IMG/VR virus record: IMGVR_UViG_3300023049_000005
Coordinates: 1 to 64,000 of that record
Length of the DNA: 64,000 bases
Reading direction: 5' to 3' (one strand)
The notes beneath the pieces are model-generated. The model worked only from the letters and a program-made list of their open reading frames with translations, was not told the origin of the DNA and did no database searches. A program made the position numbers and the translations under genes. Shown here piece after piece: positions 2,559 through 50,156 of this stretch. Position 1 is the first letter of the stretch. Each line of letters begins with the position of its first letter.

Positions 2559-2589
2559 GTCTTATATATTATTTATGAAGTATATATAT

Positions 2590-2598: not shown

Positions 2599-2602
2599 CT
2601 TC

Positions 2603-8166: not shown

Positions 8167-8194
8167 TCTACAAATATAATAAAATATATAGTAT

Positions 8195-20200: not shown

Positions 20201-20445
20201 ATCATTTTAACCTTACCTGTGCGAATAGCGTGATCCGATGCGTTGGTTAATATTTCATCATATAACTTAATAAAGGCAGGGTTATGATTAACCTTCTTCT
20301 TTTCTATTACTATATTATTTAGATCATTATCTTTAATAACGAACATCTCTTGTTCTTCTGTTACCTTAGATCCAACATAGGTTTCTGATCTTTTTAGGAT
20401 GTGTTCTCTTTGACTTAACTTTACATACTTATTCTCTTTAGCCAT
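17209..20445 (-). CDS. single-polypeptide type IIA DNA topoisomerase (ATPase, TOPRIM and breakage-reunion domains fused)
   Basis: DEILTNASDH, GGRNGLGAK, TEGDSA, PLKGKILN, DSDLDG, YYKGLGTS, DGLKP, YHHGE, catalytic SRY. Confidence 0.96.
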   Translation of the reverse strand: MAKENKYVKLSQREHILKRSETYVGSKVTEEQEMFVIKDNDLNNIVIEKKKVNHNPAFIKLYDEILTNASDHAIRTGKVKMIKVIIDDKKIVIENDGPTIPIEKHSKEKVYNPELIFSHLLTGENYDDTEKRLTGGRNGLGAKLCNVFSKKFKVECCDGKKMYRQWSKNNMKDIEEPEITNVKDTKSFTRITYYPDYSQFDFDSLTEDLKSIMYKRCLDVAAYIPDVRISLDGKTLPIKRLSDYMKLHLEEGQDFFYEQMDNGWEIGIAKSNEHGFVFNSICNGITTHRGGTHINHVSLNLAKQIAGKIKKKVSWQDVKNKLHIFLVCKIPNPTFDTQTKENLTNKMTVDIHQNVEVKDNTIRKVMKSDIYQAIIEEMEMREKLQLKKMGGGKKSNVNMPKLVDANKAGTRESDKCSLLLTEGDSALGFAVAGMSIVGRDYYGAFPLKGKILNTRDTSAQKIKRNKEIQSLLDIVGLQFGKKYEDTSDLRYGKIIILTDSDLDGIHIKGLLINFFEDNWPELLKLDILYEFITPILKVRKAKQVKSFYTIKEYQKWLATDVKGWSVKYYKGLGTSTAKEAKEYFSDLNNHLLPFNWDTDKNHDYIDLVFNKSRSDERKDWMIKNNVKDVVKYKTPTPISSFINNEMIGFSLEDNIRSIPDLYDGLKPSHRKIMNTVIKRNIIKDTPVSSLGGSVKETQKYHHGEQSLEMGIVNLAQDFVGSNNIPLLVPNGNFGTRLQGGKDAASSRYINTFLSDATKTIFDKRDEDILEYLQEDGVVIEPKHFKPIIPMVLVNGAEGIGTGWSTYIPKYNPNDLIRVIENKMSGKKSHRIHPHYNGFKGSIEETDNGYITYGNVDIVNTTTVRITELPIGYWTHNFTEHLHKLIEAKFIKEFLDNSTEQEVDITITISRENMMKVSKKEKLIDKFKLSSRLYTSNMHLFVDGNIRKFDQVEEIIDVFYDKRLDDYTKRKKSLLDVLNVEKTKLDNQVRFIKMVIKDELKVNNRKKDIIIKDLKKNKFDLYNDSYDYLLGMPIYSLTKEKVDELSEKLKNKKAEYNALKKKSPKDLWSDDLKDLKSFL

Positions 20446-31485: not shown

Positions 31486-31959
31486 TTACTTATTTAGTTT
31501 TAGTATTAAATCAGTAATAAGTAATTTACCATATTCGGCTATTTCTTCATCTGTTAGCTTATCCCTTACTCTTTTATCACGTAATAAAAGTATTACTATA
31601 TCATCATGACCTCTCTTTGCTGCCCATCGTATAGCCATATTATTTATTGTACTAGGATCAACTCTTGGATCTTTAAGTAATAGTTTAACAATTTCTAGAT
31701 GATTCGATTCTGCTGCTAATCGTATAGCATAGTTTTTTTCATCACTAGGATCAACTCTATCATCTTTTAATAACTCTCGGACTACTTCTATATGACCATT
31801 ACAAGATGCCCATACTATACCATTATTTCCATTATTACTAGGATCAACTCTTGGGTCTTTTAAAAACAATTTAACTAAATTTAGATCACCTATTTTACAA
31901 GCCTCAATAAATTCTTGTTGTTTATTATCTGATTCGAATAGTTTATAACTTTTAATTAT
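31486..31959 (-). CDS. ankyrin repeat protein with non-canonical or disrupted start
   Basis: LLKDxRVDPS ankyrin repeats; the frame extends upstream of TTG 31869 as IIKSYKLFESDNKQQEFIEACKIGDLNLVKL, with no ATG/GTG. Confidence 0.75.
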   Translation of the reverse strand: MIKSYKLFESDNKQQEFIEACKIGDLNLVKLFLKDPRVDPSNNGNNGIVWASCNGHIEVVRELLKDDRVDPSDEKNYAIRLAAESNHLEIVKLLLKDPRVDPSTINNMAIRWAAKRGHDDIVILLLRDKRVRDKLTDEEIAEYGKLLITDLILKLNK

Positions 31960-32022
31960 AAACTGATCTAATTTATCACGTATTTATATAACTATTCTAT
32001 TTTAGTTATATATTAAATATAA

Positions 32023-32337
32023 TTAGATAATAATTAAAGAGTCGATGAACTCATCTCTTTTCTGAGCTAAGAGATTTTGACGCATTTTATCATCAAATTT
32101 ATAATAATGAATAGAGTCGATATTATTAACCACATAGAAAAAAATATTAACTCTATCATATTTAGTCTTGAATAATTCATCCCCTATTTTTATGAGATAT
32201 TTATTGAGATGAATGATAATGCCATCGTGATCGAATACAGTTATATTAGATAAACGAATATATGTAGGTGTTATATCTACAGATGAATCATTTTTATGTT
32301 CATCAATATAATCGTATATCCGTTCTTCAATAGTCAT
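32023..32337 (-). CDS. hypothetical protein with C-terminal RDxxID tag
   Basis: Ends RDEFIDSLIII; TACCTTTG 5 nt before ATG. Confidence 0.7.
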   Translation of the reverse strand: MTIEERIYDYIDEHKNDSSVDITPTYIRLSNITVFDHDGIIIHLNKYLIKIGDELFKTKYDRVNIFFYVVNNIDSIHYYKFDDKMRQNLLAQKRDEFIDSLIII

Positions 32338-32416
32338 AGATACAAAGGTAATGAATTATAACTGAAACACCCATAATTAATTATATTTTATTATTATATT
32401 ATAATGTTGCACCTTT

Positions 32417-33193
32417 TTAGTTTCTGTACCTCTTCATGATCTCAATTAAGAATGGATCTCTTACAATATCATCGTCTTCGAATTTAAAGTATCCGACACC
32501 ATCGAGACTTTCTAATCGTTCTGCAGCATCAACTGCCCCACACTTTTCATTATTTCTCGTTTTAATATCGATTTGATCAGGATCATATAGTACTACTATT
32601 TTACTATCTTCTCCTAAACGAGATAAATAAGTTTTCATTTCATTAATAGAAGTATTCTGCCCTTCATCTAAAATACAGAAGACACCTGTTGGTTCGCCTT
32701 CTTCATTAACATTACCAAAGGTTTCTCCTCTCATATAATTAATGATTCTTTCTTCTATTAGATTATTTCTAAGAAATTTAGCAACTTCCTTATCTACTAT
32801 TTTATCTAAGTTAGCATAAATAGAATTGAAATAGATATAAGTTTTATCATTGATGTCGCCTGGTAAAGCCCCTATATCATAGCTAACACTTACTATTGGT
32901 TTAGTTATCATAATATTAGAGATATTATATTCTTCGGGATGTTTTAATATTTCTAAGCCCGTTTTAAGTGAGATTAAGGATTTACCTGTACCTGCGGGTC
33001 CTTCCACGAAGGTGATTCTATTCTCTTTAATCATCTGAGCCATTTCTTTCTGTTTCTTATTCTTGAATTTTGTTCTAATATTAAATTGTAAATTAGAAAG
33101 TTCTTTTCTTTTACGAGCGTTAAGTTCGTCCATTTCGTTTGCTGCATCTCTTAGCAATTGGCTTTTAGGTGATTTCTTAGTTTTCCTTGGCAT
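32417..33193 (-). CDS. phoH: PhoH-like ATPase
   Basis: GPAGTGKS, IGALPG, YMRGETF, ILDEGQN, SRLGE, DIVR. Confidence 0.9.
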   Translation of the reverse strand: MPRKTKKSPKSQLLRDAANEMDELNARKRKELSNLQFNIRTKFKNKKQKEMAQMIKENRITFVEGPAGTGKSLISLKTGLEILKHPEEYNISNIMITKPIVSVSYDIGALPGDINDKTYIYFNSIYANLDKIVDKEVAKFLRNNLIEERIINYMRGETFGNVNEEGEPTGVFCILDEGQNTSINEMKTYLSRLGEDSKIVVLYDPDQIDIKTRNNEKCGAVDAAERLESLDGVGYFKFEDDDIVRDPFLIEIMKRYRN

Positions 33194-33261
33194 ATAAAAT
33201 TTATTTTTTTATTATTCTATATATTTTATTACCTTTGTCATCTATTATTAAAAAAGAAATT

Positions 33262-33681
33262 ATGGTAATTTTTAATCTACTTACACTTGTTTATATCATT
33301 TCTCATCTAAAGATAGCGTTGAATCCTGATTTGTTGATTAGTGGTTATAATGAAGTAAACGAAAGAAGTGAAGCTATAAAAGAAGGACGTGAGTTAAAAA
33401 AACTAACTAAGGAAACTATAACAATAACAAGAATTAGTATACTTACTTTGATATGGAGAATTAGTGGATTATTAACATCCGATTGGATTATATTTTTAAT
33501 TTATAACATATATATCCAAGTCTATTCTCTTTTTATGAAGAAAAAAAGAGGCACACCTTCTTATAGAACAGCCATTGTTATTACTTCATATATAGCTTTT
33601 TCTTTTTCTACTATATTATTTTTGAAGAATATCTTCTTTGAAAATATGAATGTTTCGGAAAAAATTATCGCTTTATTTTGA
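33262..33681 (+). CDS. hypothetical membrane protein
   Basis: Several hydrophobic segments; TACCTTTG at 33230-33237 favours ATG 33262. Confidence 0.6.
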   Translation: MVIFNLLTLVYIISHLKIALNPDLLISGYNEVNERSEAIKEGRELKKLTKETITITRISILTLIWRISGLLTSDWIIFLIYNIYIQVYSLFMKKKRGTPSYRTAIVITSYIAFSFSTILFLKNIFFENMNVSEKIIALF

Positions 33682-34873
33682 TCTTAATTGTGATCCAAAA
33701 TTTAGAAGCGTCTATATTGAAAAGTACTTTCTTATCTATTTTCTTTTTCTTACAATAAGAGATAAATTCGTTTCTTACTTTATCTAAACTTTCTTTCTCT
33801 ATAATACCGTCTTTCCATTCTCCCATACCGTAGTACCTTTGTATGATAGATTTATCTTTGATATAAGGATTAGTCTTTTTCTCAAAATAACCAGGTGAGA
33901 AATCAGACATCAGCTTCTTAATTTTCATATGAGAAATAACATCTTCCTTTGATAAACTATCAATATCATCTCTTAACTGTTGTAATACTTTACCTTTACT
34001 ATCCTTAAGTTCTTTGAAGTTTCTTTTAGAAAGTTTATATTCACCTACTTTTATTTTCTGATCACTATCATCTATATTAATACCATACTCTAAGAATAGA
34101 GAAGTAGTATAAGTTATTCCGAAATATAATTTAATGCTGCCTTGTGACTGAGTTATATAATCTGAAATTTGTTCCATTGATTTAAATCGCTCTAAGATAG
34201 AAAGTAACCTTTCTTTATTAACTGATTCAGTGATATAAAAAGAAAAGAAACTATTAGGGCATCTATCTTCTTCTTTTGTTAATTCAGGAAGTGATAATGC
34301 TGTTAATATTTTTAAGAAACTATTGAATCCTGTTTTATTAAGTACTATTAAGTTTTTAATATTAAGATCTTCGAATTTATTACTTTCTTCTATTTTAAAG
34401 TTATCATTGATCGATTTAACTAATGCCATTTGATCATAAGGATTAAGTATATTTACTGCCTTAGAAATACGAATTGAAGTATCAACTGATTTATCATTAA
34501 ATCTTTTTCTGTAATGATCAATAATATCTTCCTTTTTTAATGTTTCATTAGGTGCATTTTGTATATCACTTTCGTTGATATTATGACTAACTATATAACT
34601 TCTTCCTTTCTTCTCAACTATTTTAACAGGTGTTAACATGTTGTTATACCAATACTCAGTAAGGACTATATCATTTTCATCAAATTTCTTTGAATCGTTT
34701 TTACCCACAGGTAGTTTAAGATATTCCCCAAGGATTCTTGAAAAGTCTTCTTTTTCTTCATTCTTAATATTATCATATACGTGTTCAACATATTCACCAA
34801 GTGAACCGTATTCATTTTTAATATCAGCGTATATTCCTTCGTTTATTTTAAAGTTATTGAATTTGGTAATCAT
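33665..34873 (-). CDS. hypothetical protein with capsid-targeting-like motif
   Basis: Starts MITKFNNFKINEG; TAATATATA-N4-ATG. Confidence 0.8.
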   Translation of the reverse strand: MITKFNNFKINEGIYADIKNEYGSLGEYVEHVYDNIKNEEKEDFSRILGEYLKLPVGKNDSKKFDENDIVLTEYWYNNMLTPVKIVEKKGRSYIVSHNINESDIQNAPNETLKKEDIIDHYRKRFNDKSVDTSIRISKAVNILNPYDQMALVKSINDNFKIEESNKFEDLNIKNLIVLNKTGFNSFLKILTALSLPELTKEEDRCPNSFFSFYITESVNKERLLSILERFKSMEQISDYITQSQGSIKLYFGITYTTSLFLEYGINIDDSDQKIKVGEYKLSKRNFKELKDSKGKVLQQLRDDIDSLSKEDVISHMKIKKLMSDFSPGYFEKKTNPYIKDKSIIQRYYGMGEWKDGIIEKESLDKVRNEFISYCKKKKIDKKVLFNIDASKFWITIKIKIKR

Positions 34874-34888
34874 ATCTTATATATTAAA

Positions 34889-36320
34889 CTATTGATTTAA
34901 CTTTGTTAACATATCACCCACATATGGTTTAGTTATTTTGAGAAGTTCCTTTTCTGTTAACTTTTCTCTCACTCTTTCGTCTCTCAATAATTGTAATATT
35001 AATTCTTTTTCGTCCTTAAAGTCTCTTAGTGTTCTATTTAAAACATAATTAGAATTAGCACTTGGATCAACTCTATCGTCTTTTAATAACACCTTCACTA
35101 AATCTATTTCACCTACAAAAATTGCATTTCCTATAATAATATTATCATTAACACTTGGATCAACTCTATCATCTTTTAATAATAATCTTACGATATTAAA
35201 ATAGCCTTTTTTAGATGCTTCTATTATGTTTATATTATCACCATCACTAGGATCAACTCTATCATCTTTCATCAATAGGCTTACTAATGCCATATCTCCC
35301 CTCTCCACTGCTGCCCTTATAGTCCAATTATTCACATCAGTTGGATCTACTTTAGGGTGTTTTAATAACATATGCACTATCGAAATTTCTCCATATAATG
35401 ATGCCATTCGTATAGCGTAGTTAGCCTCTATACTAGGATCAACTCTTTTATCATTTAGTAAAAGTTTAACTACTTTGATATGTCCGTTTTCTGCTGCACT
35501 TTTTATAGCTTTACCACCTTTAGCATTAGGATTAACTTCCTCAAATCCTAATAAATATTCTACTACTTCGGGGTTATTGTTATTCGCAGCTATTCTTATA
35601 GCTTGGTCTTCAAATGCTGTTGGGTCTAAATCATATTCTTCTATAAATAATTTAACTAAATTTAGATGACCCCAAGCTGCTGCTGATATTAAATTATTTT
35701 CAGTAGGAAGATTCCCTGTTTCGATTATTTTTTTAATCATTTCCATATCAACATTAGGCTTCTCTATTTCTAACATTAAAGCCATCTCATGTTTGAGGTC
35801 TTCAATGAAATTATCTTCATTTAATTTTTGGATCATACTACTAACAAGTGGTCTACCTTTAGCATATCTCTTAATTTCTTTTTTAGATAAATGTTTATAT
35901 ACCTCAGGTTGATTGAGTAGTAGATATACCACATCATCATGACCATTTTCATATGCGTATTCTATGGGAGTATTACTATCTAAATATCCACTTGCGTTAA
36001 ACCTGCCGTCTTTTAAAAGTAATTTAATAATTTCTAAATAACCTTCTTGTGCAGCCGTTTCTATTAAATCGTGTTCTCTTCTTTTATCTACCCCTTTATA
36101 TCTTAATAGAAACTTCAGAAGTTCAGGTTGATTCATACGAACTGCATAATATATAGGTGAATTTTTATTAGTAGTTGGTTTAATTTTTTCTTTACGAATC
36201 ATTTTTTTTAACATGTTCGATATCCCCCTCCATTGAAGCATATACTATTTGTTCCTTAGGGTCTAAAATATACCCCCCGTTTTTAGTAGTATATCCTTCA
36301 TATAATTTAATATATTTCAT
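34889..36320 (-). CDS. long ankyrin repeat protein, frameshifted at an A8 run near its 5' end
   Basis: Multiple DxRVDPS ankyrin repeats in 34889..36241; upstream 42-aa ORF 36192..36320 (MKYIKLYEGY...YASMEGDIEHVKK) joins in frame if T8 at 36202-36209 is T7. Confidence 0.8.
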
Positions 36321-36366
36321 ATCATATATATTATATTGAAGAAATGCTTTGCTTAATATATACTAA

Positions 36367-36585
36367 GTGAATGATAAAGATAGGATAATATATGATCTAC
36401 TATTTAGTGAAAAAACTGAGTTCAGTTTTGAAATATCATCTCTTTTTGAGTTCATAGAAGATTACAGAGATGTGATCGAAAGTATAGTAAAGAGTGCTAA
36501 TAAAGGTAGAGTTAGTATAGTGAAAGATATTATTGAAGTAAAAGGCGATGATATTTTTTGGAATATAAAAATAAAAAGAAAGTAA
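36367..36585 (+). CDS. hypothetical protein (late)
   Basis: TAATATATA-N4-GTG; precedes the giant gene. Confidence 0.7.
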   Translation: MNDKDRIIYDLLFSEKTEFSFEISSLFEFIEDYRDVIESIVKSANKGRVSIVKDIIEVKGDDIFWNIKIKRK

Positions 36586-36586
36586 T

Positions 36587-39500
36587 ATGTGGGATTATTC
36601 CTCAATAGAAGACAATTTTAAAAAGAGAACAGGAAAGCTTGATAAAAAGACATTTAACTTTCTTAGACAAGAAATAGATTCAGTTCGCTTTTATTCTAAG
36701 TGTTTAGATGGAAGTAGCTATGTTTATTCTGATGACTTAAATAATATTTATGACCTTCAGTTTAGAGACTATAATACTTATAAAATAAGCAGCGAATATT
36801 CTACATATTATAACGGTGGTGATGCTGATGGTATTGCTATTGATAGACAAGGAAACAGTGATCTTGGATTTTATAACAGATATAAAAACGATTATGGTTA
36901 TACAGTTAAAAACTTATTTAGTCCTAAGCGTTTATTTAATTATACAAATTATTATAACGTAGACCTTGCTACTACTCAACCAATAGACTTCGATCTAGTT
37001 GATGATAAACTTACTATTGATGGAGAAATTGTGATAATCGGACAAAGAATACTAGTAAAAGATAATATATCTACTGTAACATTAGACAGTAGTATTGATG
37101 CTGAAACATTTTTAAACACTGACGTAACAGTTGTTCAAACTATTGGTGGACAAATAACTTATCAATATTCTAATAACGAGAATGGTGTTTATAGATACGA
37201 TGGTTTACAACTTATAAGAGAAAACGATTTAGATACAGTAGATAATGTCAGAAATTATTCTGTGTATGTAAAATTAGGAAGCAGTAATATAACAAAAAGT
37301 TTCCATTTAAATAGATTAACAAACGGGGCATTTCCTTTAATAACCAATAATGAAAATATATCATTTACAGAAAAAAATGATTATGTGATCAGAAATTCTG
37401 TTGATTATAGAAACGTACTTGATAATAATTTTGCTACATCGTTGGCTCAACTTGAAACAGTATTTAGTTTCAGGGGTAATACATATGATATACCAAATAG
37501 AAATATTACAGTTGGTGATTTTGGCTTGATATTAAATTACCAAAATAACTATATGAATATTGTTAAAAACAGATTCAAAGAAGATCTCAAAGATATCATA
37601 GAATTAAATAATAAGTATCTAATCGTTGGTAACAACGGCACTCTTTTATCTATGGATAAAGTTTACTTTGATCTAAGTATTATCGAAATTGATTCTATTG
37701 AGGATCTACTTTCAATTGATATTAGAAACGGTAAAGGAATTATAGTAGGATCGAACGGTAGTATATTAACATCTATTAATAATAATAATTGGAATGAATT
37801 AGATAACCCAATAGAAAATAACATTAATGCAGTACAATATTTTAATTTAGCTAAGGCTAATTATATAGGAAATAATGGGGTTTTTGGTGAGGTTAATGTA
37901 AGCGGAGATCAGTTTAAAATAACAGAAAAAGAATTAACTATTCGTCCTAATTTATTCGACGAAAGGATAATAAGAGATGATTTACATAACATAAATAACG
38001 TAGAAATAGAGAACCAATTTTTCAAATACACAGGTGCAGATTGGGTAGACATACCTAAAGATATAAACAGTAGCTTTAGTTTTGATTTTAGTTTCAAACC
38101 AACAGACTTAGAAGCTAATGATACACAAGTATTATTCTCTATTACACCTACACCTTCGGCTACACAAAGCGCAGTTAATATTAAAGGGTTTAAAGTGTTT
38201 ATTGAAAAAGAAAATAATGATTATAGACTTAGATTATCGATTACTGATCCAAATGGAAATGAAGTTAAATTAGATGGTGATATATCTCTTTCTAATGATA
38301 AATGGTATAAAGTATTCATAACTCGTTTCAAAAACGAATATGAATTTTTTGTGAATAATAGATTAGGCGCAGAAACAGCATTGGGCTTTGATAGTAACTT
38401 TGATAACTTCAATGATACTATCAGATTAGGTGCGGAATTAACATATGATTTTAATAATTCACAATATTTAACTGCAAGTTATAATAACTTTATTGGTACA
38501 ATTGATAATGTGAGATTATGGGATAAGCGTTTAGATAACCAAGAAGTATTTAGTTATGGTAATTACTATTCAGATGATTTACCAAATCTAGTTACTTGGT
38601 ATAAATTTAAAGTAACTAAGAACGCTAGTGGTGATAAAATAATATTAACAAATGATGTAGTAGATAATAGATCTCTTTCGTTACCAAGTAATTCTAATAT
38701 AACTTTTTATAATGCAAATACTTCGGCTACTGCGATGTTAGAAATTGAATTATTTAAGGGAACGTCCATCATAGGAGATAATATAATTGTATTTGATTTA
38801 GAAGATCAATCTAATTATTCAGATATAACAACTAATACACAGTTTTATATTACATTTGATAATGAAAGCCCTAAGAACTTACGATATTATAGTACAGATG
38901 GTTATTATTATGGGGTATCTGATCAGAGAAGTTTTAGAATAGATTCATTTAAATTAGACTTCAACTTACTGAATTATATCAATGATATAGAAGTAGAATT
39001 AGAACCTATTTCAAATAAAGGATATGACAATTTAAGTATAAACTTTAACCTTCAAGAATTATTATTAATCGGAAGTGTAGAAAATAATGAGATTGATAAA
39101 ATCGATCTCAATAATGTGTGTGTTATACAACCTGTTGATAGATTAGAAGGTTGTACTATATCTTCTACTGTTTCGATAATAGACACTACAAATAGTATTG
39201 ATATTGAAAATGATTATAAAGATAATGTAACAGACGAAGTTAATGTTTGTAGCATTAACTATATTAAAGCATTAGGTTTCCCTTCGTCAACACAATCAGT
39301 ATGTACGTTCTATGTACCTAATGGTGATGGACAACCATTTGATCTTTATCAAGAAGTGTATTTAGTGGGAGAAGTAGAAGATCAATTAAATGGATATTTT
39401 GAGGTTAGTTTTAACGGAGTAGACTTTGAAGAAATAAGAGGTAATGGTGAATTTATCGTACCATTAGGAGTAGGGGCAGATTCATCTCTAACATTTAGAA

Positions 39501-42500
39501 CACGATTAGCAGAAGGTGCTGATGGTAATAAAGTAAAAGGATTAATTAAGAATTTAAAAGTATATGATAATTGTGTTAGAGATTTGTTCCCTGAACAGTA
39601 TACAGGTAATGCAGTAGAAGTTAAGAAATTATACTTTTCTCAGTTTGATAAAACGACTGAGGTTGATAAGATAACAGCTAGTAACTATTTATATTCATAT
39701 ATAGATCTTAAGAGCTTACAGATAAATAATATTGAAGAAATAAATTTAGCTACATATCAATCAGAGGGGTTTCCTGTGAGATTATTTGAATCACAAGTAG
39801 TTAATAATGCACTTGTGAACTGTCAAAATACAGGATTATGTTCAAGATCTACTTTCTTAACTAATAATACTATAGACAGAATTCAATACGGACTTGGATT
39901 ATCGCTTAGTTTAACAGGTGATGATTATGTATATAATAATACATCATATAATTTATTAGAACCACTTACATTAACTAATGTTCAATTATTTGGAATCGAT
40001 GATCATGAAGTGGGTGGATTAAATAGTCCATACCACATAGGTTTTGATATTTCTAAAAATTTCTATTTTGAAGTGGATTCAGTAATAATAACAGAAGAAG
40101 ATCTATTAAATAGTGATATCACAAATGGTGCATATATTACCCAATCTGTTGAAATGTCAGCGACATCATCATTAGGTTCAGGATTAGCAGCAGATGTGTT
40201 TAATCAAATAGTGTTCACAGGTAGTTTAGCCACATATAGTGTACTTACTGATGTAACATTAAATGAGAATTCTAAATATTTATTGGAATTGGAAATAGAC
40301 GGTGATCTTGATTTCACATTCGGTACAAACTCATATTCAGTAACGGGATCTAATACATTTGTTAGTCAGATAGTAGAGGTAAACCAAGATAGTGATTTTA
40401 TTGTAATGAAAGCAAACTCTAACACTACTATTACTAACTTAGTTGTATCAGATCGAGTTCCAACTAAGTCATTCATTAAATGGGATACAGAAACATGTGA
40501 TCTAACATATAAATTAAGTGGTGTTAGTGTAGAAGAAGGATTCATTCAAAGTGATGGTGAAAGATTTTTACCACAGTGTGTGTTACAACAAGATTGTGAT
40601 ATAACAGTGGAGAGTATAGTGAATACTCAATATTGGGAAGACTATGATCCGAAATTACTTTTCTTAAACTATGATGTAGCCAATAAATTATATTTCTTTG
40701 ATTTAGAAACAGGAGAATACCAACTTCCACAAAACGCTCAGTTATTCGATGTAAGAGAATTAACAATAGAAAGCCTTAGTGGGGAAAAGTCTTGGTTAGA
40801 TTACGTAAGAGATACGACAAAAGAATTTTTATATGCTGCTGTGAAATCAACAGGCAATACAGTCCCTTGGTCAAATTCATTTATATTATGTGGTAATATT
40901 ACTTCATATACTTTAACATTAAATACTAATACTACAAACGATCTTTCGGAGATCAACGGTGTAGCATCAGGATTATTACCTAACTATGCAACGGGTAGTA
41001 CAATATCAATTGGTGTGCCACCTGTTTCAAAGGATGTTTATTTATATAAAAATGCTATGGTAATAAAAATACCAACAACGTTTGATATAGAAATAGGAGA
41101 TGTTATTAAGTTTACGAACAGTTTAATAGATATAAATTTAATTACAATCGATCTTTTAGATGATGGTGGGAATACATACGCATATTTCAAAACAGGATTC
41201 GATGATTACTTAATTAGTAGATTAGTAAGTTGGACAAAGACAACTACTATAACTAACTTAAACAGATTTAAAGACATAGATGAACTATTATTAAATTTTA
41301 ATCTCCATCCAATTAGTATAGGATATACTTTATCAGAAATAAATGGCGGTGTTGAACTATCACCTAAGTATAATTACCAAACAGCATACTATAATTTACA
41401 GTGTAATATCTCTGTTAGAAACAATGATTTAATTGTTACGGATACTCAAATGAGATATAGAGATAAAGTGACATTATTTGATTATTCTCCTAATTATAGC
41501 ATATTATCATATTTAACTAAAGATAGTCGATTTGATGCAAGTTTTAAATTAAGATCGTTGCCTGAATATAATTTCCCTAATAATAACAGTGGAGTATTAT
41601 ATACACTTTCAACAGGTGAGATATCATTCAATTCTAGCTTAAAAGCAGAGTGGGAATCTATTCCAATATACACTTTCATAGATCTAGTATATGATACTGC
41701 TTCAATAAGAAGTGTATTAATAATGAGTAAAAATTATGATGAAGTAACAGAAAGATATATTATTAAGACATATGATTATTATGATGATGTAATTCAACAA
41801 TCTGATTTAACAGGAGCTAATTTTAATTTAAGAGTAAGAAATACACTTGGTGAAATATCAGAAGATCTTAAAAAACTTGATAATATCCAAAGGGTTGAAT
41901 CTGATGAATATGATATTACGAATTTAAATGCTACTATTTTCAGTAGTTATAAAAACTTAAAATCAGATCTTAACTTCAAACCATATACAGATAGTTATGC
42001 GAAGGCATTCTTATCACAAAAAGAAATAAAAGAATATTTAAGTGGTATAGTTTATACCGACTTTAATAATAACTTAGCGATGAATATCATAAATCTAACT
42101 AAGGATGATTATTTCCCAATCACAGGTATTAGTAAGTATTATATAGATTGTGAAGATTGTGTTCACGATAATTTTATATCATTTGATGGATTTAATCAGT
42201 TCTCTTATTTTGGAGCAGCTACAAGTTCAACGAATCGTGTACCATTCGAAACATATGGGTTTAATAATCAAATTCAAGTTTTTGGGGCAACAGGTGCTAC
42301 ATTTGTAGATATACCATTAAACTATGCAACACAAAGTGGTACGTCATCAAGAATGATAGAATTCGATATACAAGAATTAGAAAACGCAACAATAGAATTA
42401 AGAAAAGGTGGAACAAGTTTAACAACAATTAGCCGTGTCCCAAATGAAATAACTAAAGTTCAATTTATATCAGATGATACAAGTGATCTATTATTTAGAA

Positions 42501-44653
42501 TAAATTATGATCCTGAAAATAGAACAGTTATAAATGATATAAGAGCAGGTGATATAGAATGTTTAGATAATTGTTATTTAACAACATTAAGAATACCTGA
42601 TCATGGATTACAAATCGGTGATGAATTTACAGTTAAGATAGAAGATGATATTTTTGAATTAGTTAATTTATATGAATCTGATTTTGCTTTCGCAACACAA
42701 AGTGGTTGGGTACAAAATGTGAATGGCGTAGAAACTGCTATCCCATTACTTAATGGACAGATAGATGACTATTCTGTAGTAAATAGTGTTGATAGTATCT
42801 ATTATGATCAACCAATTGGTGTTACTGTTGGAAGAACATATAGAATAAGTTTTGATTACAGTATGTTCGCATTTGGTGGCGGCACACCTAGTTTAGATGT
42901 AGCTTTCGGGGCAACACCTTCTCCTACATTTAATACAGTAATTAATGAATTAAGTGTAGCGAATAATCAAAGAGTAGAAACTAATTTTATTGCAACTACT
43001 TCTAGTATATACGTAGGATTCAATACAGAAAATCCTCAAATATTGACACTTCGTAATATAACAGTAGATGATATAACAAATAGGAGTAAGTATTATGATG
43101 GTAGACAAATAGCCTTTGATGTATTAAATGAAGATGTGATTGTAATTGATACAGATTATATTGGTGATGTAGTAGAAACATCAGCTACTTATACTGCGAT
43201 AAACCCCTGTGGTAAAAAAGTAATTAGAGAAAGAATAACTTCTCTTGTTGGTACAATAAGCGTATCAGAGTTCGATCCTTATTTGAATTATGAGCCAATA
43301 GATCTATATGATTTAGGTAATGATAATAAGATTAAGTACCCTACGGAGATAAACGATATTAATTGGAATATTAATGATGAAGTAGTTAATATAACAGGAA
43401 TTGATAATAACCCATATAGGTTTAGGTTAATTGATAATTTAACTTTTGATGAAATATTAGATAAATATCCTTGGTTATTAGAAGCTGAAATAAGAAATGC
43501 TGTTATTGGTAAAGATCAGAACGGATTAGTATGGTACAAAGGTACATGGGATTGTGGAAGATGGTTAGGTGGTACTTGGTATTCAGGTACATGGAAAACA
43601 GGAGTATGGTATAACGGTACTTGGTTTAATAGTAGAGTAACAACAGATAATAATAGTGCTACTATCGATGTGATAGATGCTTTCGGTGATTATAGTGTAT
43701 GGAAAGGTGGAACATGGTTCAACGGTACTAAGAAAGGTGGTCGTTGGGAATCAGGTGATTGGTTTGATGGTACTTGGGAAAAAGGCGATTGGTTAGGTGG
43801 CACTTGGAGAGGTGGTACATGGATAGACGGTAATTTCAAAAGAGGTAATTGGTTTGATGGTACATGGACAAAGGGTACATTCAATTCTGATTTTGGATTG
43901 AGTAGATGGTTTGATGGTAATTGGCTAAGAGGTGATTTTGAAAACGGTATATGGTTCAAAGGAAGATTCGAAAGTATCGGAGCGCAATCTACATTTGGTA
44001 ACAGAGCTACATTATCTAGAAAAGCTATTTGGGAAAATGGTTTTATGGTAGCAGGAACAGTTAATAGTGGAGATAATAGTAGACATGATCTTACGGTTTG
44101 GAAAACAGGTAGAGCTAATTTCCTATTATGGAATGGTGGTACAATGTTCCAAAACAATATAAACAATTGTGTATGGCAAGACGGTGTTGTTAAAGACATT
44201 GATATATTAGCTTTCTATGGGGATAATACAGGTGATTACTATTTTATAGTAGACGGAGAATATCGTTTCGAAGATGGTAATAACTTTTGGGTAATCAATA
44301 ATGACACATATAATCCTATATATGGCGCAGATACTACACCGAATAGATATACAGTTGATTTAGATTATCTAAGTTTAGATAACGGAAGGTTGACTAAGGT
44401 ATATGTTTCTAATCTACCTAGTGCTTTACTTGCTGTGATAAATAATAACGGAAGTTACGTAGAAGGGTTTTCTGATAATAATAATCCTGTTGATACAGAA
44501 GTAGATGGTACAATATTAACTAAATTAGTATCTGAGTTCTCTAAGACGAGTTGGTTTAATGGTAGAATCGAGAACTGTATATTTGATGATAGATTTATCA
44601 GAAGTGTGTATTGGGAAAACGGTTACTTCAAATCAGGTGATTTTGGATTTTAA
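36587..44653 (+). CDS. giant (2688 aa) virion structural/adhesion protein
   Basis: Tail-fibre-type VDLATT..IDG..RILVKD..ENGVY motif, propeller-like VGNNG repeats, LamG-like KWY..F.GTIDNVRLW, C-terminal GxW pentapeptide repeats. Confidence 0.75.
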   Translation: MWDYSSIEDNFKKRTGKLDKKTFNFLRQEIDSVRFYSKCLDGSSYVYSDDLNNIYDLQFRDYNTYKISSEYSTYYNGGDADGIAIDRQGNSDLGFYNRYKNDYGYTVKNLFSPKRLFNYTNYYNVDLATTQPIDFDLVDDKLTIDGEIVIIGQRILVKDNISTVTLDSSIDAETFLNTDVTVVQTIGGQITYQYSNNENGVYRYDGLQLIRENDLDTVDNVRNYSVYVKLGSSNITKSFHLNRLTNGAFPLITNNENISFTEKNDYVIRNSVDYRNVLDNNFATSLAQLETVFSFRGNTYDIPNRNITVGDFGLILNYQNNYMNIVKNRFKEDLKDIIELNNKYLIVGNNGTLLSMDKVYFDLSIIEIDSIEDLLSIDIRNGKGIIVGSNGSILTSINNNNWNELDNPIENNINAVQYFNLAKANYIGNNGVFGEVNVSGDQFKITEKELTIRPNLFDERIIRDDLHNINNVEIENQFFKYTGADWVDIPKDINSSFSFDFSFKPTDLEANDTQVLFSITPTPSATQSAVNIKGFKVFIEKENNDYRLRLSITDPNGNEVKLDGDISLSNDKWYKVFITRFKNEYEFFVNNRLGAETALGFDSNFDNFNDTIRLGAELTYDFNNSQYLTASYNNFIGTIDNVRLWDKRLDNQEVFSYGNYYSDDLPNLVTWYKFKVTKNASGDKIILTNDVVDNRSLSLPSNSNITFYNANTSATAMLEIELFKGTSIIGDNIIVFDLEDQSNYSDITTNTQFYITFDNESPKNLRYYSTDGYYYGVSDQRSFRIDSFKLDFNLLNYINDIEVELEPISNKGYDNLSINFNLQELLLIGSVENNEIDKIDLNNVCVIQPVDRLEGCTISSTVSIIDTTNSIDIENDYKDNVTDEVNVCSINYIKALGFPSSTQSVCTFYVPNGDGQPFDLYQEVYLVGEVEDQLNGYFEVSFNGVDFEEIRGNGEFIVPLGVGADSSLTFRTRLAEGADGNKVKGLIKNLKVYDNCVRDLFPEQYTGNAVEVKKLYFSQFDKTTEVDKITASNYLYSYIDLKSLQINNIEEINLATYQSEGFPVRLFESQVVNNALVNCQNTGLCSRSTFLTNNTIDRIQYGLGLSLSLTGDDYVYNNTSYNLLEPLTLTNVQLFGIDDHEVGGLNSPYHIGFDISKNFYFEVDSVIITEEDLLNSDITNGAYITQSVEMSATSSLGSGLAADVFNQIVFTGSLATYSVLTDVTLNENSKYLLELEIDGDLDFTFGTNSYSVTGSNTFVSQIVEVNQDSDFIVMKANSNTTITNLVVSDRVPTKSFIKWDTETCDLTYKLSGVSVEEGFIQSDGERFLPQCVLQQDCDITVESIVNTQYWEDYDPKLLFLNYDVANKLYFFDLETGEYQLPQNAQLFDVRELTIESLSGEKSWLDYVRDTTKEFLYAAVKSTGNTVPWSNSFILCGNITSYTLTLNTNTTNDLSEINGVASGLLPNYATGSTISIGVPPVSKDVYLYKNAMVIKIPTTFDIEIGDVIKFTNSLIDINLITIDLLDDGGNTYAYFKTGFDDYLISRLVSWTKTTTITNLNRFKDIDELLLNFNLHPISIGYTLSEINGGVELSPKYNYQTAYYNLQCNISVRNNDLIVTDTQMRYRDKVTLFDYSPNYSILSYLTKDSRFDASFKLRSLPEYNFPNNNSGVLYTLSTGEISFNSSLKAEWESIPIYTFIDLVYDTASIRSVLIMSKNYDEVTERYIIKTYDYYDDVIQQSDLTGANFNLRVRNTLGEISEDLKKLDNIQRVESDEYDITNLNATIFSSYKNLKSDLNFKPYTDSYAKAFLSQKEIKEYLSGIVYTDFNNNLAMNIINLTKDDYFPITGISKYYIDCEDCVHDNFISFDGFNQFSYFGAATSSTNRVPFETYGFNNQIQVFGATGATFVDIPLNYATQSGTSSRMIEFDIQELENATIELRKGGTSLTTISRVPNEITKVQFISDDTSDLLFRINYDPENRTVINDIRAGDIECLDNCYLTTLRIPDHGLQIGDEFTVKIEDDIFELVNLYESDFAFATQSGWVQNVNGVETAIPLLNGQIDDYSVVNSVDSIYYDQPIGVTVGRTYRISFDYSMFAFGGGTPSLDVAFGATPSPTFNTVINELSVANNQRVETNFIATTSSIYVGFNTENPQILTLRNITVDDITNRSKYYDGRQIAFDVLNEDVIVIDTDYIGDVVETSATYTAINPCGKKVIRERITSLVGTISVSEFDPYLNYEPIDLYDLGNDNKIKYPTEINDINWNINDEVVNITGIDNNPYRFRLIDNLTFDEILDKYPWLLEAEIRNAVIGKDQNGLVWYKGTWDCGRWLGGTWYSGTWKTGVWYNGTWFNSRVTTDNNSATIDVIDAFGDYSVWKGGTWFNGTKKGGRWESGDWFDGTWEKGDWLGGTWRGGTWIDGNFKRGNWFDGTWTKGTFNSDFGLSRWFDGNWLRGDFENGIWFKGRFESIGAQSTFGNRATLSRKAIWENGFMVAGTVNSGDNSRHDLTVWKTGRANFLLWNGGTMFQNNINNCVWQDGVVKDIDILAFYGDNTGDYYFIVDGEYRFEDGNNFWVINNDTYNPIYGADTTPNRYTVDLDYLSLDNGRLTKVYVSNLPSALLAVINNNGSYVEGFSDNNNPVDTEVDGTILTKLVSEFSKTSWFNGRIENCIFDDRFIRSVYWENGYFKSGDFGF
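43532..44180 (+). repeat. GxWxx pentapeptide repeat coding region (probable beta-helix)
   Basis: KGTWDCGRWLGGTWYSGTWKTGVWYNGTW and following repeats. Confidence 0.85.
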
Positions 44654-44663
44654 TATATATACT

Positions 44664-45044
44664 GTGATCAAAAGTTATAAAATATTCGAATCAGATAATA
44701 AGGAACGAAGACTTAATCAAGCTGCTATAAAAGGAGATTTAAAAGAAGTAAAGAAATTACTTAACGACTCTGATGTAGATATAGAGCATTATGATAATTC
44801 CGCACTTTGGTATGCAGTAGCATATAATCGTTTAGATGTAATAAAAGAATTATTAAAAGACCCTAGAATTGATCCTACTTATGATAAGAACCGTGCTATT
44901 AAATTAGCATCATCAAATGGTGATGATGAGATAGTATTATTGTTGTTACATGACAAAAGAGTACAAAAAAGTCTATCTAAAAAAAAATTAGCAGAGTTTG
45001 GTAAACTACTTACTGCTGATTTGATAGTAAATCTAAATAAGTAA
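44664..45044 (+). CDS. ankyrin repeat protein with capsid-targeting-like motif
   Basis: TAATATATA-N4-GTG; MIKSYKIFESDNK; LLKDPRIDPT; paralog of the 31486 gene. Confidence 0.8.
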   Translation: MIKSYKIFESDNKERRLNQAAIKGDLKEVKKLLNDSDVDIEHYDNSALWYAVAYNRLDVIKELLKDPRIDPTYDKNRAIKLASSNGDDEIVLLLLHDKRVQKSLSKKKLAEFGKLLTADLIVNLNK

Positions 45045-45060
45045 TTTAATATATAATATA

Positions 45061-45624
45061 ATGGATAAGTTTAGTAAATTAAAGAAGAAGAAAAAGAAAA
45101 AGGGTGATAAACTTTTATATGAAGGAGATTACCTGAAGGTTTATAAAAGAGATGATTGGGCATATATCAAAGAACCTGATAATGCTTGTGTAGTTCCTAT
45201 TTTATTAGATAGTGATGAATTCTTAGTAAGGATGGAAGTAATACCAAGTTTCCAATCGAGAGATGATCAAGATTATCACTTAACATGTATTAGCGGAACA
45301 ATCGAAGATGAAGAATCTCCTAAGATGTGTTTAGTTAGAGAACTAGAAGAAGAAGCGGGTATCCGTTTAAAAGATAATGTTAATATCGAATTCTTTGATG
45401 TTTTATATAAATCTAAAAGTCAGAGTTCTCAATTCCATTTATGTATATTACCATTATTATCTTATCAATTTGATGAAGTAGTAGCTAAAGGAGATGGATC
45501 TAATATAGAGAAGATGTCTAAAACAGTAGCAGTTTCTTATGATAATATAGATAGACTATTCCCATCTGATATAGTAACCTCATTACTTTTAGAGAAGGTT
45601 AAAGAACATTTTAAGAAGAAATAA
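45061..45624 (+). CDS. Nudix hydrolase (ADP-ribose pyrophosphatase-like)
   Basis: Nudix box GTIEDEESPKMCLVRELEEEAG. Confidence 0.85.
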   Translation: MDKFSKLKKKKKKKGDKLLYEGDYLKVYKRDDWAYIKEPDNACVVPILLDSDEFLVRMEVIPSFQSRDDQDYHLTCISGTIEDEESPKMCLVRELEEEAGIRLKDNVNIEFFDVLYKSKSQSSQFHLCILPLLSYQFDEVVAKGDGSNIEKMSKTVAVSYDNIDRLFPSDIVTSLLLEKVKEHFKKK

Positions 45625-45709: not shown

Positions 45710-46423
45710 ATGAATAATGAAAAAAAATCAGGAAGTATCGTAGACCTTCCTTCTAATTCTATGACTCCTTATATATTAGAGGAAAGACAAATGAATGTTA
45801 CGCAGATGGATGTGTTCAGTCGTTTGTTACAAGACAGAATCATCTTTGTATCGGGTGTAGTTAATGAATATATGTGTAATGTAATCCAAGCACAGCTTCT
45901 TTTCTTAGAGTCTGCGGATGCATCGAGAGACATTACATTGTATATCAACAGCCCAGGCGGGAGTGTAATCCACGGTCTTGGTATCGTAGACGTAATGAAC
46001 TACATTAAGCCTGATGTAGCAACAATCAATGTTGGTATGTGTGCATCTATGGGATCTGTTCTATTATCAGCAGGAGCAGAAGGAAAAAGATCAACATTAG
46101 TTTCGGCTAAAGTGATGATCCACCAAGCAAGTAGTGGAACACAAGGTAATGTACAAGATCAGGCTATTTCTTTAAGAGAAACACACATGTATAATTACAT
46201 CTTACTTAAAACTTTAGCCAAGAACACAGGACAGACATTAGAGAACATGATTAAATTTTCTGAAAGGGATCTTTGGTTGGATTCTGATGAGTCCAAAGAA
46301 TTTGGTATAGTGGACGAAGTTATTATTCCTGATGGGTCAGAATCTATCTCTGAGCTTAAACAAGGTTTCAATGAGTATATGGAATCAGTTAACAGTAAGC
46401 ACGTATATAAAAATAATAAGTAA
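45710..46423 (+). CDS. clpP: ATP-dependent Clp protease proteolytic subunit
   Basis: DVFSRLLQDRIIF, YINSPGG, GMCASMG (catalytic Ser), MIHQ, ERD. Confidence 0.96.
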   Translation: MNNEKKSGSIVDLPSNSMTPYILEERQMNVTQMDVFSRLLQDRIIFVSGVVNEYMCNVIQAQLLFLESADASRDITLYINSPGGSVIHGLGIVDVMNYIKPDVATINVGMCASMGSVLLSAGAEGKRSTLVSAKVMIHQASSGTQGNVQDQAISLRETHMYNYILLKTLAKNTGQTLENMIKFSERDLWLDSDESKEFGIVDEVIIPDGSESISELKQGFNEYMESVNSKHVYKNNK

Positions 46424-48266: not shown

Positions 48267-50156
48267 TTATTCATCATCTTTCACTTCCTCAAAATCTACA
48301 TCATTGACTTCTTGTTCAGTGTTATCTGTTGAACCTTCCTCTGTATTAGATTCTTGTTCTTGTTGATATAACTTAGTAGAAATAGTAGACCAAGACTGTT
48401 GAAGATCTTCCATCAATGAATCAATAGAATCTAGATCTTTATTCTCATGTGCTTCTTTTAAAGCTTTAGACTTTTCTTCTAACTCAGTTCGATCAGAATC
48501 TTCTAACTTATCTTCGCTTTCTTTGATGAATTTCTCAGTTGAAAAAATTAACTGATCCGCAGAGTTTAGTTTATCAACTTCCTCTTTCTTTTTCTTATCA
48601 GCTTCTGCGTTTTCTTCCGCATCTTTCTTCATTTTCTCGATTTCTTCGTCTGACAGTTGACCGCCATTTTCGATTCTAATATCGTTTTCTTTACCCGTAG
48701 CTTTATCAACAGCTTTAACTGTTAATACACCATTAGCATCGATATTAAAACTAACTTCGATTTGTGGTACTCCTCTTGGAGATGGTGGAATTCCATCTAA
48801 GTGAAACGTACCTAGTGTCTTATTGTCGGTAAAGAACTCACGTTCTCCTACACCAACATTAATCTGAACACTTGGTTGATTATCACTAGCCGTACTATAC
48901 ACTTCCTTCTTTTCAGCAGGGATAGTAGTATTGGCTTCGATCATCTTAGTGAATACACCACCCATTGTTTCAATACCCATACTCATTGGAGTAACATCCA
49001 ATAGAAGAATATCTTCTACTTCATTGTTTAATACACCACCTTGTATAGCAGCACCTAGAGATACGACCTCATCAGGGTTAACACTCTTATTGGGTGCTTT
49101 ACCAAAGAATTTTTCAACAGCTTCTTGTACAGCAGGAATTCTAGTAGATCCACCCACTAAGATTATCTCATCGATATCACTATTCTTAATACCTGCGTTT
49201 TTCATTGCGTTCTTACACGGCTTCAAAGTTCTAGCAATAAATGAATCGATCAATTTATTGAACTCACTTCTAGAAAGAGTTTTCACGTAATGTTTAGGAT
49301 TGTTATCTACTACCGTAATATAAGGCAAGTTAATTTCAGTTGAAGTAGTAGATGATAATTCTATCTTAGCTTTTTCAGCAGCTTCTTTCAATCTCTGTAA
49401 TGCCATAGAATCTTCTTTTAGATCCATACCATTTTCTTCTTTGAACCCATCATTTAACCAATCGATTAATATTTCATCTACATTATCACCACCTAAATGA
49501 ACATCACCATCAGTAGACTTAACCTCAAATACACCATCACCTAGATCTAAGATAGAGATATCAAATGTACCACCACCTAAATCATATACTGCGATAGTTT
49601 TATCTTCTTCGGTTTTATCTAAACCATATGCTAATGCTGCAGCAGTAGGCTCATTGATAATTCTTTTTACCTCAAGACCTGCAATTTTACCTGCCTCAAT
49701 AGTAGCGTTTCTTTCTTGGTCATTAAAGAAAGCAGGAACTGTAATCACACATTCCTTAACATCTTGTCCTAGATAAGACTCAGCAGATTTCTTTAACTTT
49801 TGTAATATCATTGAAGATATTTCTTGTGGTGTGTATTCTCTGTCTCCGATCTTTACCACAGGGATATTTGCTTTATTTTTCACTACTTTAAAAGAAACGT
49901 TTTTTATTTCGTTTTTTACTTCATTGTAGTTCTTCCCAATAAATCTTTTAATTGAGAATACTGTGCTTTCAGGATTGGTTACCATTTGTCTCTTAGCACT
50001 ATCTCCTACTTTTCTTTCACCATCTTCTCCAAATGCTACAATAGAAGGCGTAGTTCTTTTTCCTTCTTCGTTATTAATAACAGTAGCTTTACCGCTTTCG
50101 ATTACTGATACACAACTATTTGATGTACCTAAATCAATTCCTATAATTTTACCCAT
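48267..50156 (-). CDS. dnaK: Hsp70 chaperone DnaK
   Basis: [54 protein letters not shown]. Confidence 0.98.

What the first reader, a model, noticed from the sequence alone, without database searches (positions are those of the whole stretch)
31486..45044. Family of eukaryote/NCLDV-style ankyrin proteins tagged for packaging
Seen: three genes with LLKDxRVDPS repeats, capsid-type N-termini and a shared C-terminal cap (KLTDEEIAEYGKLLITDLILKLNK, SLSKKKLAEFGKLLTADLIVNLNK, KLTEKELLKITKPYVGDMLTKLNQ). The cap also recurs internally in the long gene, implying fusion of two units. Established: this repeat style is typical of giant viruses and some eukaryotes, and phage ankyrins have been linked to modulating eukaryotic immunity. 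Inference: injected anti-defence binders, or effectors aimed at a eukaryotic partner of the host.
Basis: partly seen in the sequence, partly recalled or inferred. Interest (0 to 1): 0.6.

Follow-up and report, generated by a model that had tools for sequence, protein, structure and literature searches.

The report
Leader-tagged ankyrin genes in a huge lake phage
A 270-kb lake-water phage carries three related ankyrin-repeat genes of the kind usual in giant viruses and protists, each fitted with the short N-terminal leader that this phage group puts on dozens of otherwise unrelated proteins; the leader looks like phage T4's capsid-packaging tag, but packaging is not shown.

Summary
Three ankyrin genes lie at 31486-31983 (-), 34889-36320 (-) and 44664-45044 (+), and they are the only ones in the 270,756-bp phage record. 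All have 31-residue LLKDxRVDPS-type repeats, a shared folded C-terminal cap and a shared N-terminal leader (MK-Y-I-K-L-F/Y-E type). The long gene is a fusion of two capped units.

In the window's strain two of the three are damaged. Ank1 has ATA where other lake samples have ATG. Ank2 is split by an A8 run that is A7 elsewhere.

The leader heads 13-15 ORFs by a strict score, against 0.2-0.5 expected, and about 35 loosely. It is tied to a promoter-like TTAATATATA box set 4 nt before the start codon. The same box also precedes the capsid, protease, sheath and tube genes. The leader ends in an L-x-E site, as the T4 capsid targeting sequence does.

The phage has a gp21-type protease fused to a scaffold. 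Box and leader recur in two of the four largest known phage genomes (634-642 kb; both are uncultured records).

Packaging and injection therefore remain a plausible inference (about 0.45). The idea of an effector aimed at a eukaryote has no support. The repeat type is indeed that of giant viruses, protists and protist symbionts.

The parts
31486..31983 (-). Ank1, 165 codons plus stop. Three full 31-aa repeats plus the cap. Leader motif at residues 10-18 (31956-31930); cap at residues 126-165 (31608-31489). The first codon is ATA in this strain and ATG in other lakes.
   Evidence: Pfam Ank_2 E 3e-25; open frame of 165 aa; T>C at 31981 in runs X3 and X4
32006..32017 (-). Promoter-like box (TTTAATATATAA) about 23 nt upstream of the Ank1 start position.
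   Evidence: Sequence; the box is 18-fold enriched upstream of ORFs
34889..36320 (-). Ank2, 476 codons when the A run is read as A7. Unit 1 is residues 1-168 (36320-35816); unit 2 is residues 169-476 (35815-34892). In this strain it is split into a 42-codon leader ORF (36320-36192) and the 450-codon frame (36241-34889).
   Evidence: Pfam Ank_2 E 4e-38
36202..36209 (-). A8 homopolymer that breaks Ank2. One A fewer is seen in contigs of two other lake samples.
   Evidence: table 4: 1 letter left out at 36202 in X2 and X3; the source run X1 keeps A8
35816..35941 (-). Internal cap of Ank2, ending in KLNE at 35827-35816. It is the junction of the two fused units and a candidate L-x-E cleavage site.
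   Evidence: Cap alignment; the ortholog in L095 stops 10 aa after the same motif
36321..36333 (-). Promoter-like box TAATATATA plus a 4-nt spacer directly before the Ank2 ATG (leaderless-type layout).
44664..45044 (+). Ank3, 126 codons plus stop, with a GTG start. Leader at residues 1-9, two repeats plus the cap (cap 44922-45041). It starts 11 nt after the stop of the 2688-aa gene.
   Evidence: Pfam Ank_2 E 6e-11; AF2 model with pLDDT 88
44650..44663 (+). Promoter-like box TTAATATATA plus a 4-nt spacer before the Ank3 GTG. It overlaps the stop codon of the 2688-aa gene.

Best explanation
Shown. The window is the first 64 kb of a 270-kb tailed phage from lake water. Its head genes are T4-like, and its capsid protein is closest to the 634-735-kb 'Mahaphage' genomes, which are predicted to infect Bacteroidota. 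It carries three paralogous ankyrin-repeat proteins. Each is built as: short disordered N-terminal leader, then a stack of 31-residue VDPS-type ankyrin repeats, then a folded three-helix C-terminal cap. One of them is a head-to-tail fusion of two such units. The leader is shared with at least a dozen, probably about 35, otherwise unrelated proteins of this phage, one of them a NUDIX enzyme. It is linked to a TTAATATATA box placed 4 nt before the start codon. The same box, 18-31 nt upstream, precedes the capsid, protease/scaffold, sheath, tube and hub genes, and it is missing before the replication genes.

Inferred. The box is the late promoter, and the 4-nt class gives leaderless late mRNAs. 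The leader works like the T4 capsid targeting sequence: it brings the protein into the scaffold core of the prohead, and the gp21-type protease removes it after the conserved Glu (L-F/Y-E). The same protease may also cut Ank2 at its internal KLNE. The ankyrin stacks would then travel in the capsid and enter the bacterium with the DNA. There they would act as protein binders, most likely blocking a host defence or other host enzyme, as T4 IPI* does. The target is unknown. In the window's strain Ank1 and Ank2 are probably not made in full.
For: Ankyrin identity and fold. Only three copies in the genome.

Leader statistics: 13-15 N-termini score at least 10 bits, against 0.2-0.5 expected. PTm1, a phage of equal GC content, has none. 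The codons vary synonymously.

The leader is appended to unrelated cargo. Ten top carriers have no PHROG family and at most one small Pfam match. One carrier is a NUDIX domain that starts at residue 19.

T4 comparison: IPII and IPIII start MKTYQEFIAE and IPI starts MKTFKEF. The T4 tag is a 10-20-residue propeptide, the only part conserved among diverse internal proteins, and is cut after Glu at ITE/LTE-type sites (PMC3012670, PMC5694885).

Machinery present: portal, gp21-type protease and capsid protein are found by PHROG. The protease is fused to a scaffold with about 12 Y-I/L-A-E repeats, and this scaffold holds KLNE and KLFE side by side. The capsid protein's N-terminal 40 residues end in a conserved I/L-N-E in more than 40 relatives.

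Promoter classes. Leader and 4-nt box go together (odds ratio 11, p 3e-5).

Leader disordered: residues 1-9 have pLDDT below 50.

The same box and leader occur in LR745206 (34 sites; 16 of 20 sampled ORFs carry the leader), in LR756502 (31 sites) and in a 145-kb contig with two leader-tagged Ank genes.
Against: There is no proteome, no RNA run and no cultured relative that has the leader.

The match to the T4 tag is one of style, not an alignable homology; the register of the aromatic and Glu residues differs.

About 35 tagged proteins is many for a head cargo. The tetrapeptide K-L/I-F/Y-E also occurs inside ordinary proteins.

In Ank1 the leader starts at residue 10 when the ATG variant is used.

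The fixed link to a leaderless-type promoter could mean that the N-terminus serves expression rather than sorting.

Two of the three genes are broken in this strain, so they are dispensable, at least there.

The complex prediction of the protease domain with the Ank3 N-terminus gave no verdict.
Confidence: 0.45

Rival explanations
1. The leader is not a packaging tag. It belongs to the expression system of leaderless late mRNAs, or it is a sorting or turnover signal inside the infected cell, for instance recognition by the phage-encoded ClpP system at 45710-46423. The ankyrin proteins then stay in the cytoplasm as binders or assembly helpers and are not injected.
For: About half of the 45-47 genes with the box 4 nt before the start carry the leader, and most strict leaders sit in that class. 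The phage encodes ClpP, DnaK and DnaJ. The leader starts Met-basic-hydrophobic-hydrophobic, a pattern also known for N-terminal protease recognition (own knowledge, not tested).
Against: Codons of the leader vary synonymously, and about half of the 4-nt-box genes lack it, so the mRNA layout alone does not demand it. The conserved Glu with L-x-E, the same words in the scaffold, and the T4 precedent for diverse proteins sharing only a tag all fit packaging better.
Confidence: 0.3
2. The ankyrin proteins are effectors aimed at a eukaryote (a grazing protist, or a eukaryotic host of the bacterium), as proposed for the ankyrin proteins of sponge-symbiont phages.
For: The repeat type is that of giant viruses, chytrids, amoebae and protist symbionts such as Chlamydiae and Dependentiae. 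There is a published precedent, bioRxiv 10.1101/608950.
Against: The proteins have no signal peptide or other export signal: the N-terminus is charged and disordered. They have no F-box, unlike the chlamydial and viral relatives. The samples are open lake water and the predicted host phylum is free-living Bacteroidota. The N-terminus is the phage's own general leader.
Confidence: 0.07
3. The genes are recently acquired passengers that are decaying, and they have no function worth selection in this phage.
For: Start-codon loss in Ank1 and a frameshift in Ank2 in the window's strain. The family is absent from four of the five compared relatives, and the one Ank protein found there is of another type. 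No hit in 50,697 phage records.
Against: Intact versions occur in two or three other lake samples. Leader-tagged orthologs with the same cap persist in a phage that shares only 10 of 199 ORFs with this one, and a 5.7-kb contig holds a tandem array of them. The frames stay open over 476 codons and the cap is conserved.
Confidence: 0.15

Closest known systems
T4 internal proteins (IPI, IPII, IPIII) and Alt, with their capsid targeting sequence
   Same: They are unrelated small proteins that share only a short Lys/aromatic/Glu-rich N-terminal leader ending in an L/I-x-E site. They are made together with the head genes. A gp21-type protease and a scaffold are present. The cargo is thought to counter host defences after injection.
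   Different: The leader sequence differs in register. There are far more carriers (about 15-35). The leader is tied to a fixed promoter spacing. Ankyrin and NUDIX cargo are not known in T4. Nothing has been shown experimentally here.
F-box/ankyrin proteins with VDPS-type repeats of giant viruses (e.g. Pithovirus LCPAC302), chytrids, amoebae and Chlamydiae
   Same: They have the same 31-residue repeat with LLxDxRVDPS. The first half of the C-terminal cap (RV, then L-S/T, then E-I/L) is also shared.
   Different: The phage proteins have no F-box. Their N-terminus is the phage leader. The second half of the cap, ending K-L/M-N-K/E/Q, is seen only in the phage lineage.
ANKp of sponge-symbiont phages
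   Same: It is a phage-encoded ankyrin-repeat protein.
   Different: ANKp is described as secreted and as acting on eukaryotic immune cells in a host-associated setting. Here there is no signal peptide and the setting is open lake water.
Ejection (E) proteins of giant phages such as SPN3US and phiKZ
   Same: They are many head-internal proteins, with N-terminal propeptides removed by a gp21-related protease after Glu.
   Different: Their propeptides are mostly over 100 residues and their cleavage motif is A/S-x-E. They belong to a different phage lineage.

Membership tests
Ankyrin repeat proteins (Pfam clan Ank) | Significant match to the Ank/Ank_2 profiles | tested here: met
   E 3e-25, 4e-38 and 6e-11, all above the curated cut-offs
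Ankyrin repeat proteins (Pfam clan Ank) | Helix-turn-helix solenoid fold | tested here: met
   AF2 model of Ank3 has pLDDT 88 and paired helices over residues 13-124. All top Foldseek matches are ankyrin proteins, with probability 1.00 but weak E of about 0.01.
VDPS-type ankyrin subfamily of giant viruses, protists and protist symbionts | 31-residue repeat with LLxDxRVDPS | tested here: met
   Repeat starts are spaced 31 aa apart. The best named relatives are a Pithovirus protein, chytrids and an amoeba.
VDPS-type ankyrin subfamily of giant viruses, protists and protist symbionts | N-terminal F-box (common partner domain, not universal) | tested here: not met
   No F-box in Pfam. The N-termini are the phage leader.
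T4-type capsid-targeted internal proteins | Short N-terminal leader shared by otherwise unrelated proteins | tested here: met
T4-type capsid-targeted internal proteins | Leader homologous to the T4 tag (MKT-Y/F-x-E-F) | tested here: inconclusive
   The composition and the M-K start are similar, and one carrier (75052-75726) is close. The core register differs.
T4-type capsid-targeted internal proteins | L/I-x-E cleavage site at the end of the leader | tested here: met
   L-F/Y-E at residues 6-8 in Ank2 and 7-9 in Ank3. The scaffold and the capsid propeptide carry similar sites. This is shown at sequence level only.
T4-type capsid-targeted internal proteins | gp21-type prohead protease and scaffold core in the same genome | tested here: met
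   phrog_207 E 2e-34, fused to a repeat scaffold
T4-type capsid-targeted internal proteins | Presence in virions with the leader removed | not testable with these tools
   There is no isolate and no proteome. No RNA run was found.
Secreted phage ankyrins (ANKp type) | N-terminal signal peptide | tested here: not met
   The N-termini are charged with no hydrophobic core and are disordered in the model. No signal-peptide predictor was run.

The most novel reading that the evidence does not exclude
Huge Bacteroidota-type phages of the Mahaphage group mark roughly a tenth of their proteins with a promoter-coupled N-terminal leader. These include ankyrin binders borrowed from the eukaryote and giant-virus world and a NUDIX enzyme. 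The leader loads them into the prohead, where the gp21-type protease trims them at L-x-E sites, including the junctions of fused multi-unit proteins. The result would be an unusually large and fast-changing injected protein arsenal.
Probability: 0.35. Interest if true: 0.75.

Novelty: new variant of a known kind. Interest (0 to 1): 0.55.

Why it matters
If the leader is a packaging tag, it gives a simple sequence rule for listing the injected proteins of the largest known phages, none of which is cultured. It would also show that these phages recruit eukaryote-style binder domains as cargo. The rule can be tested directly by viral-fraction proteomics. Even if the tag has another role, a promoter-coupled N-terminal leader on 5-10% of the proteome is a feature of this phage group that my literature searches did not find described.

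Tried and rejected
No DNA match and no tblastn match for Ank1 in 50,697 phage records.

The 402-aa neighbour gene found no relative in IMG/VR, so no syntenic locus could be compared.

Literature searches for six leader strings and for the assembly accession of L006 returned nothing. A search on ankyrin in jumbo phages gave nothing specific.

The complex prediction of the protease domain (1-215) with Ank3 (1-45) gave no verdict, score 0.00. It counts neither for nor against.

Alignment A1 was too divergent to seed a genome scan. A repeat alignment (A2) was used instead, and it finds only exact repeat words.

It was redone from coordinates.

Apparent deletion joints (31541-31922, 31953-36400, 35179-36152) are cross-matches between the paralogs, not variants.

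I considered that composition alone makes the leader. This is rejected by the PTm1 control (30% GC; 0 of 311 ORFs) and by the internal-window null.

I considered that the cap tail is a by-product of an overlapping promoter. That is true in the L006 array. It is not true in the window, where the box follows the stop codon.

Full report
**What the window is.** The window is the first 64 kb of an IMG/VR virus record of 270,756 bp. The record is linear, 28% GC, with CheckV completeness 89%. PHROG profiles identify a portal, a gp21-type head maturation protease, a major head protein, a tail sheath, a tail tube, a hub, a large terminase and UvsX. It is therefore a tailed phage with a T4-like head module, not a giant virus of eukaryotes.

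Its capsid protein is 48-58% identical to the uncultured phages of 634-735 kb (LR745206, LR756502, LR756504, LR756501). It is about 29% identical to those of Tenacibaculum phage PTm1 and the Prevotella Lak phages. The 634-735-kb genomes form the Mahaphage clade, which is predicted to replicate in Bacteroidetes (PMC7162821). The DNA is held by lake-water metagenomes of six studies, one of them the probable source.

**Check of the observation.** All three frames are ankyrin proteins by Pfam, and the whole genome has no other. The repeats are 31 residues long and carry the LLKDxRVDPS signature. The three quoted C-terminal strings are exact, and a fourth copy lies inside the long gene.

The 5' ends needed correction.

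- **Ank3** starts at GTG 44664, 11 nt after the stop of the 2688-aa gene.
- **Ank2** begins at ATG 36320 in another frame and meets the 450-codon frame at an A8 run (36202-36209).
- **Ank1** is open up to 31983, where this strain has ATA.

Contigs of other lake samples, laid on the region, settle two points. One A is left out at 36202 in runs X2 and X3, which gives one 476-codon Ank2. Position 31981 reads C in X3 and X4, which turns ATA into ATG. The source run keeps A8 and ATA. So in the window's strain two of the three genes carry inactivating changes that are absent elsewhere. These are low-depth contigs (2.8-6.5x), but two runs agree on each change.

**The cap and the fusion.** The caps of Ank1, Ank3, Ank2-internal, Ank2-end and two orthologs from a 145-kb IMG/VR contig (record G001, loci L095 and L111) align without difficulty. 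The first half of the cap is the last degenerate repeat helix plus an R-V ... L-S/T ... E-I/L stretch. It also occurs in VDPS-type ankyrin proteins with F-box-like N-termini. The second half, ending K-L/M-N-K/E/Q, was seen only in the phage lineage.

The AF2 model of Ank3 (pLDDT 88) shows the cap as three well-predicted helices that close the solenoid. The G001 ortholog of Ank2 unit 1 stops ten residues after the same KMNE boundary at which Ank2 runs on into unit 2. The fusion reading is therefore supported.

**The leader.** Ank2 starts MKYIKLYE. Ank3 starts M-IKSYKIFES. Ank1 has the same nine residues at positions 10-18. A position matrix built from such N-termini gives 13-15 ORFs of 333 at 10 bits or more, against 0.2-0.5 expected from internal windows. 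By eye about 35 ORFs carry looser versions.

PTm1 has the same GC content and a similar number of ORFs, and it has none. The codons of the leader vary synonymously, so selection acts on the peptide.

The ten best carriers have no PHROG family and almost no Pfam match. One looser carrier is a NUDIX domain preceded by an 18-residue leader. In the Ank3 model, residues 1-9 are the only part with pLDDT below 50.

The leader is thus a short, unstructured, modular N-terminal addition to unrelated cargo. This is the same pattern the literature describes for the T4 internal proteins. These are diverse proteins that share only a 10-20-residue capsid targeting sequence, which is removed after Glu (PMC3012670, PMC5694885). 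The T4 leaders read from the T4 record are MKTYQEFIAE and MKTFKEF. They are similar in style, but I cannot align them convincingly with the window's motif.

**Signs of the matching machinery.** The 748-aa protease is fused to a scaffold with about twelve tandem repeats centred on Y-I/L-A-E. That scaffold holds KLNE and KLFE four residues apart. The first 40 residues of the capsid protein are conserved in more than 40 relatives and end in I/L-N-E, after which the sequence becomes variable. That is what a propeptide cut at an L/I-x-E site would look like. The leader's conserved L-F/Y-E, and the KLNE at the Ank2 junction, fit the same rule. All of this is inference from sequence.

**Promoter context.** The word AATATATA lies upstream of 94 of 333 ORFs, an 18-fold enrichment, at two spacings.

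- It is 18-31 nt before the capsid, protease, sheath, tube and baseplate-region genes.
- It is exactly 4 nt before the start codon of 45-47 genes.
- It is absent before both DNA polymerase pieces, SbcC, topoisomerase II, the helicase, UvsX and DnaK.

I read it as the late promoter, and the 4-nt class as leaderless mRNAs. About half of the 4-nt class carries the leader. The association with strict leaders has an odds ratio of 11 (p 3e-5). Ank2 and Ank3 are of the 4-nt class. Ank1 has the box about 23 nt upstream.

**Distribution.** The box-N4-ATG layout occurs 34 times in LR745206 and 31 times in LR756502, with reversed-pattern controls of 0-1. It occurs 4 times in LR756504, once in LR756501 and never in PTm1. 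Sixteen of 20 sampled ORFs behind it in LR745206 start with the leader.

G001 shares only 10 of 199 ORFs with this phage by BLASTP. It nonetheless has the same box and the same leader. It also has two leader-tagged ankyrin genes and multi-unit proteins whose units end in KKLNE. A 5.7-kb contig of an NCBI assembly (L006) is a tandem array of seven leader-tagged genes, six of which encode VDPS-type ankyrin repeats. There the cap tail encodes the box and the start codon of the next gene.

The four huge relatives lack this ankyrin family. The single Ank protein in LR756502 is of the ordinary GADVN type.

**Origin of the repeats.** Word searches return hundreds of VDPS-type proteins. Named ones are from a Pithovirus, several chytrids, Planoprotostelium and protist transcriptomes. 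One lies on a contig with an NCLDV capsid gene and VLTF3.

A scan of one genome per prokaryote species with the repeat word gave 23 loci. They lie in Chlamydiae, Dependentiae, some Clostridia MAGs and a few others; none is in Bacteroidota, and several have F-box-like N-termini. The direction and source of the transfer cannot be told from consensus-like repeats.

**Verdict.** The family, its cap, the fusion and the tag are real. 'Tagged for packaging' is the best available mechanism, but it rests on analogy and sequence rules (confidence about 0.45). The main rival is that the leader serves expression, sorting or turnover inside the infected cell. An effector aimed at a eukaryote is unlikely, because there is no export signal, no F-box and no host-associated setting. 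The damage to two of the three genes in this strain shows that they are dispensable there.

Noticed in passing
whole genome; e.g. window 2589-2602, 8181-8194, 34874-34888: A promoter-like box TTTAATATATA lies upstream of 94 of 333 ORFs, at two fixed spacings. It is 4 nt before the start codon in about 45 genes, and 18-31 nt before it in the structural genes.
   Followed up: yes
G000 97691-99937 (L011:13691-15937): The prohead protease is fused to a scaffold region. That region has about 12 tandem repeats centred on Y-I/L-A-E, followed by a long acidic tract.
   Followed up: partly
G000 91388-91831 (L011:7388-7831, minus strand): A NUDIX hydrolase carries the same N-terminal leader. A second NUDIX gene without the leader lies next to it, and a third lies at window 45061-45624.
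   Followed up: partly
G000 212311-212841 and 212838-213389: Two adjacent non-ankyrin paralogs have both a leader-like N-terminus and the same K-K-L-N-K C-terminal end as the ankyrin caps.
   Followed up: partly
window 36587-44653: A 2688-aa protein has a concanavalin-like lectin domain (Laminin_G_3) and a C-terminal run of Trp/Gly-rich short repeats. It is probably a fibre or adhesin. The Ank3 promoter box overlaps its stop codon.
   Followed up: no
G000 82243-84936, 178533-180764, 230115-232544, 252561-256598: Four large proteins (743-1345 aa) share an N-terminal stretch of the type E-N-x-x-Q-A-K-S-x-L-K-K after a leader-like start. The two that were scanned have no PHROG match.
   Followed up: no
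window 53092-54600 and G000 224475-225908: The DNA polymerase appears split into two genes about 170 kb apart.
   Followed up: no
window 17209-20445, 45710-46423, 48267-50156; G000 152898-153938: The phage encodes a single-chain type II topoisomerase of 1078 aa, and also ClpP, DnaK and DnaJ.
   Followed up: no
L006 (5.7-kb NCBI contig), gene junctions near 2884, 3677, 5489: In this tandem array of leader-tagged genes, each gene's last codons encode the promoter box and the start codon of the next gene, with a 14-nt overlap.
   Followed up: partly
L095 7610-12481 (record G001): Next to the ankyrin ortholog lie proteins of 125, 164, 484 and 844 aa. They are built from one to about six units, and each unit ends in a KKLNE-type motif.
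   Followed up: partly
protein P0211 (JGI contig of 2.4 kb): This VDPS-type ankyrin protein has an N-terminus (MKTYNEYIQ) even closer to the T4 capsid targeting sequence.
   Followed up: no
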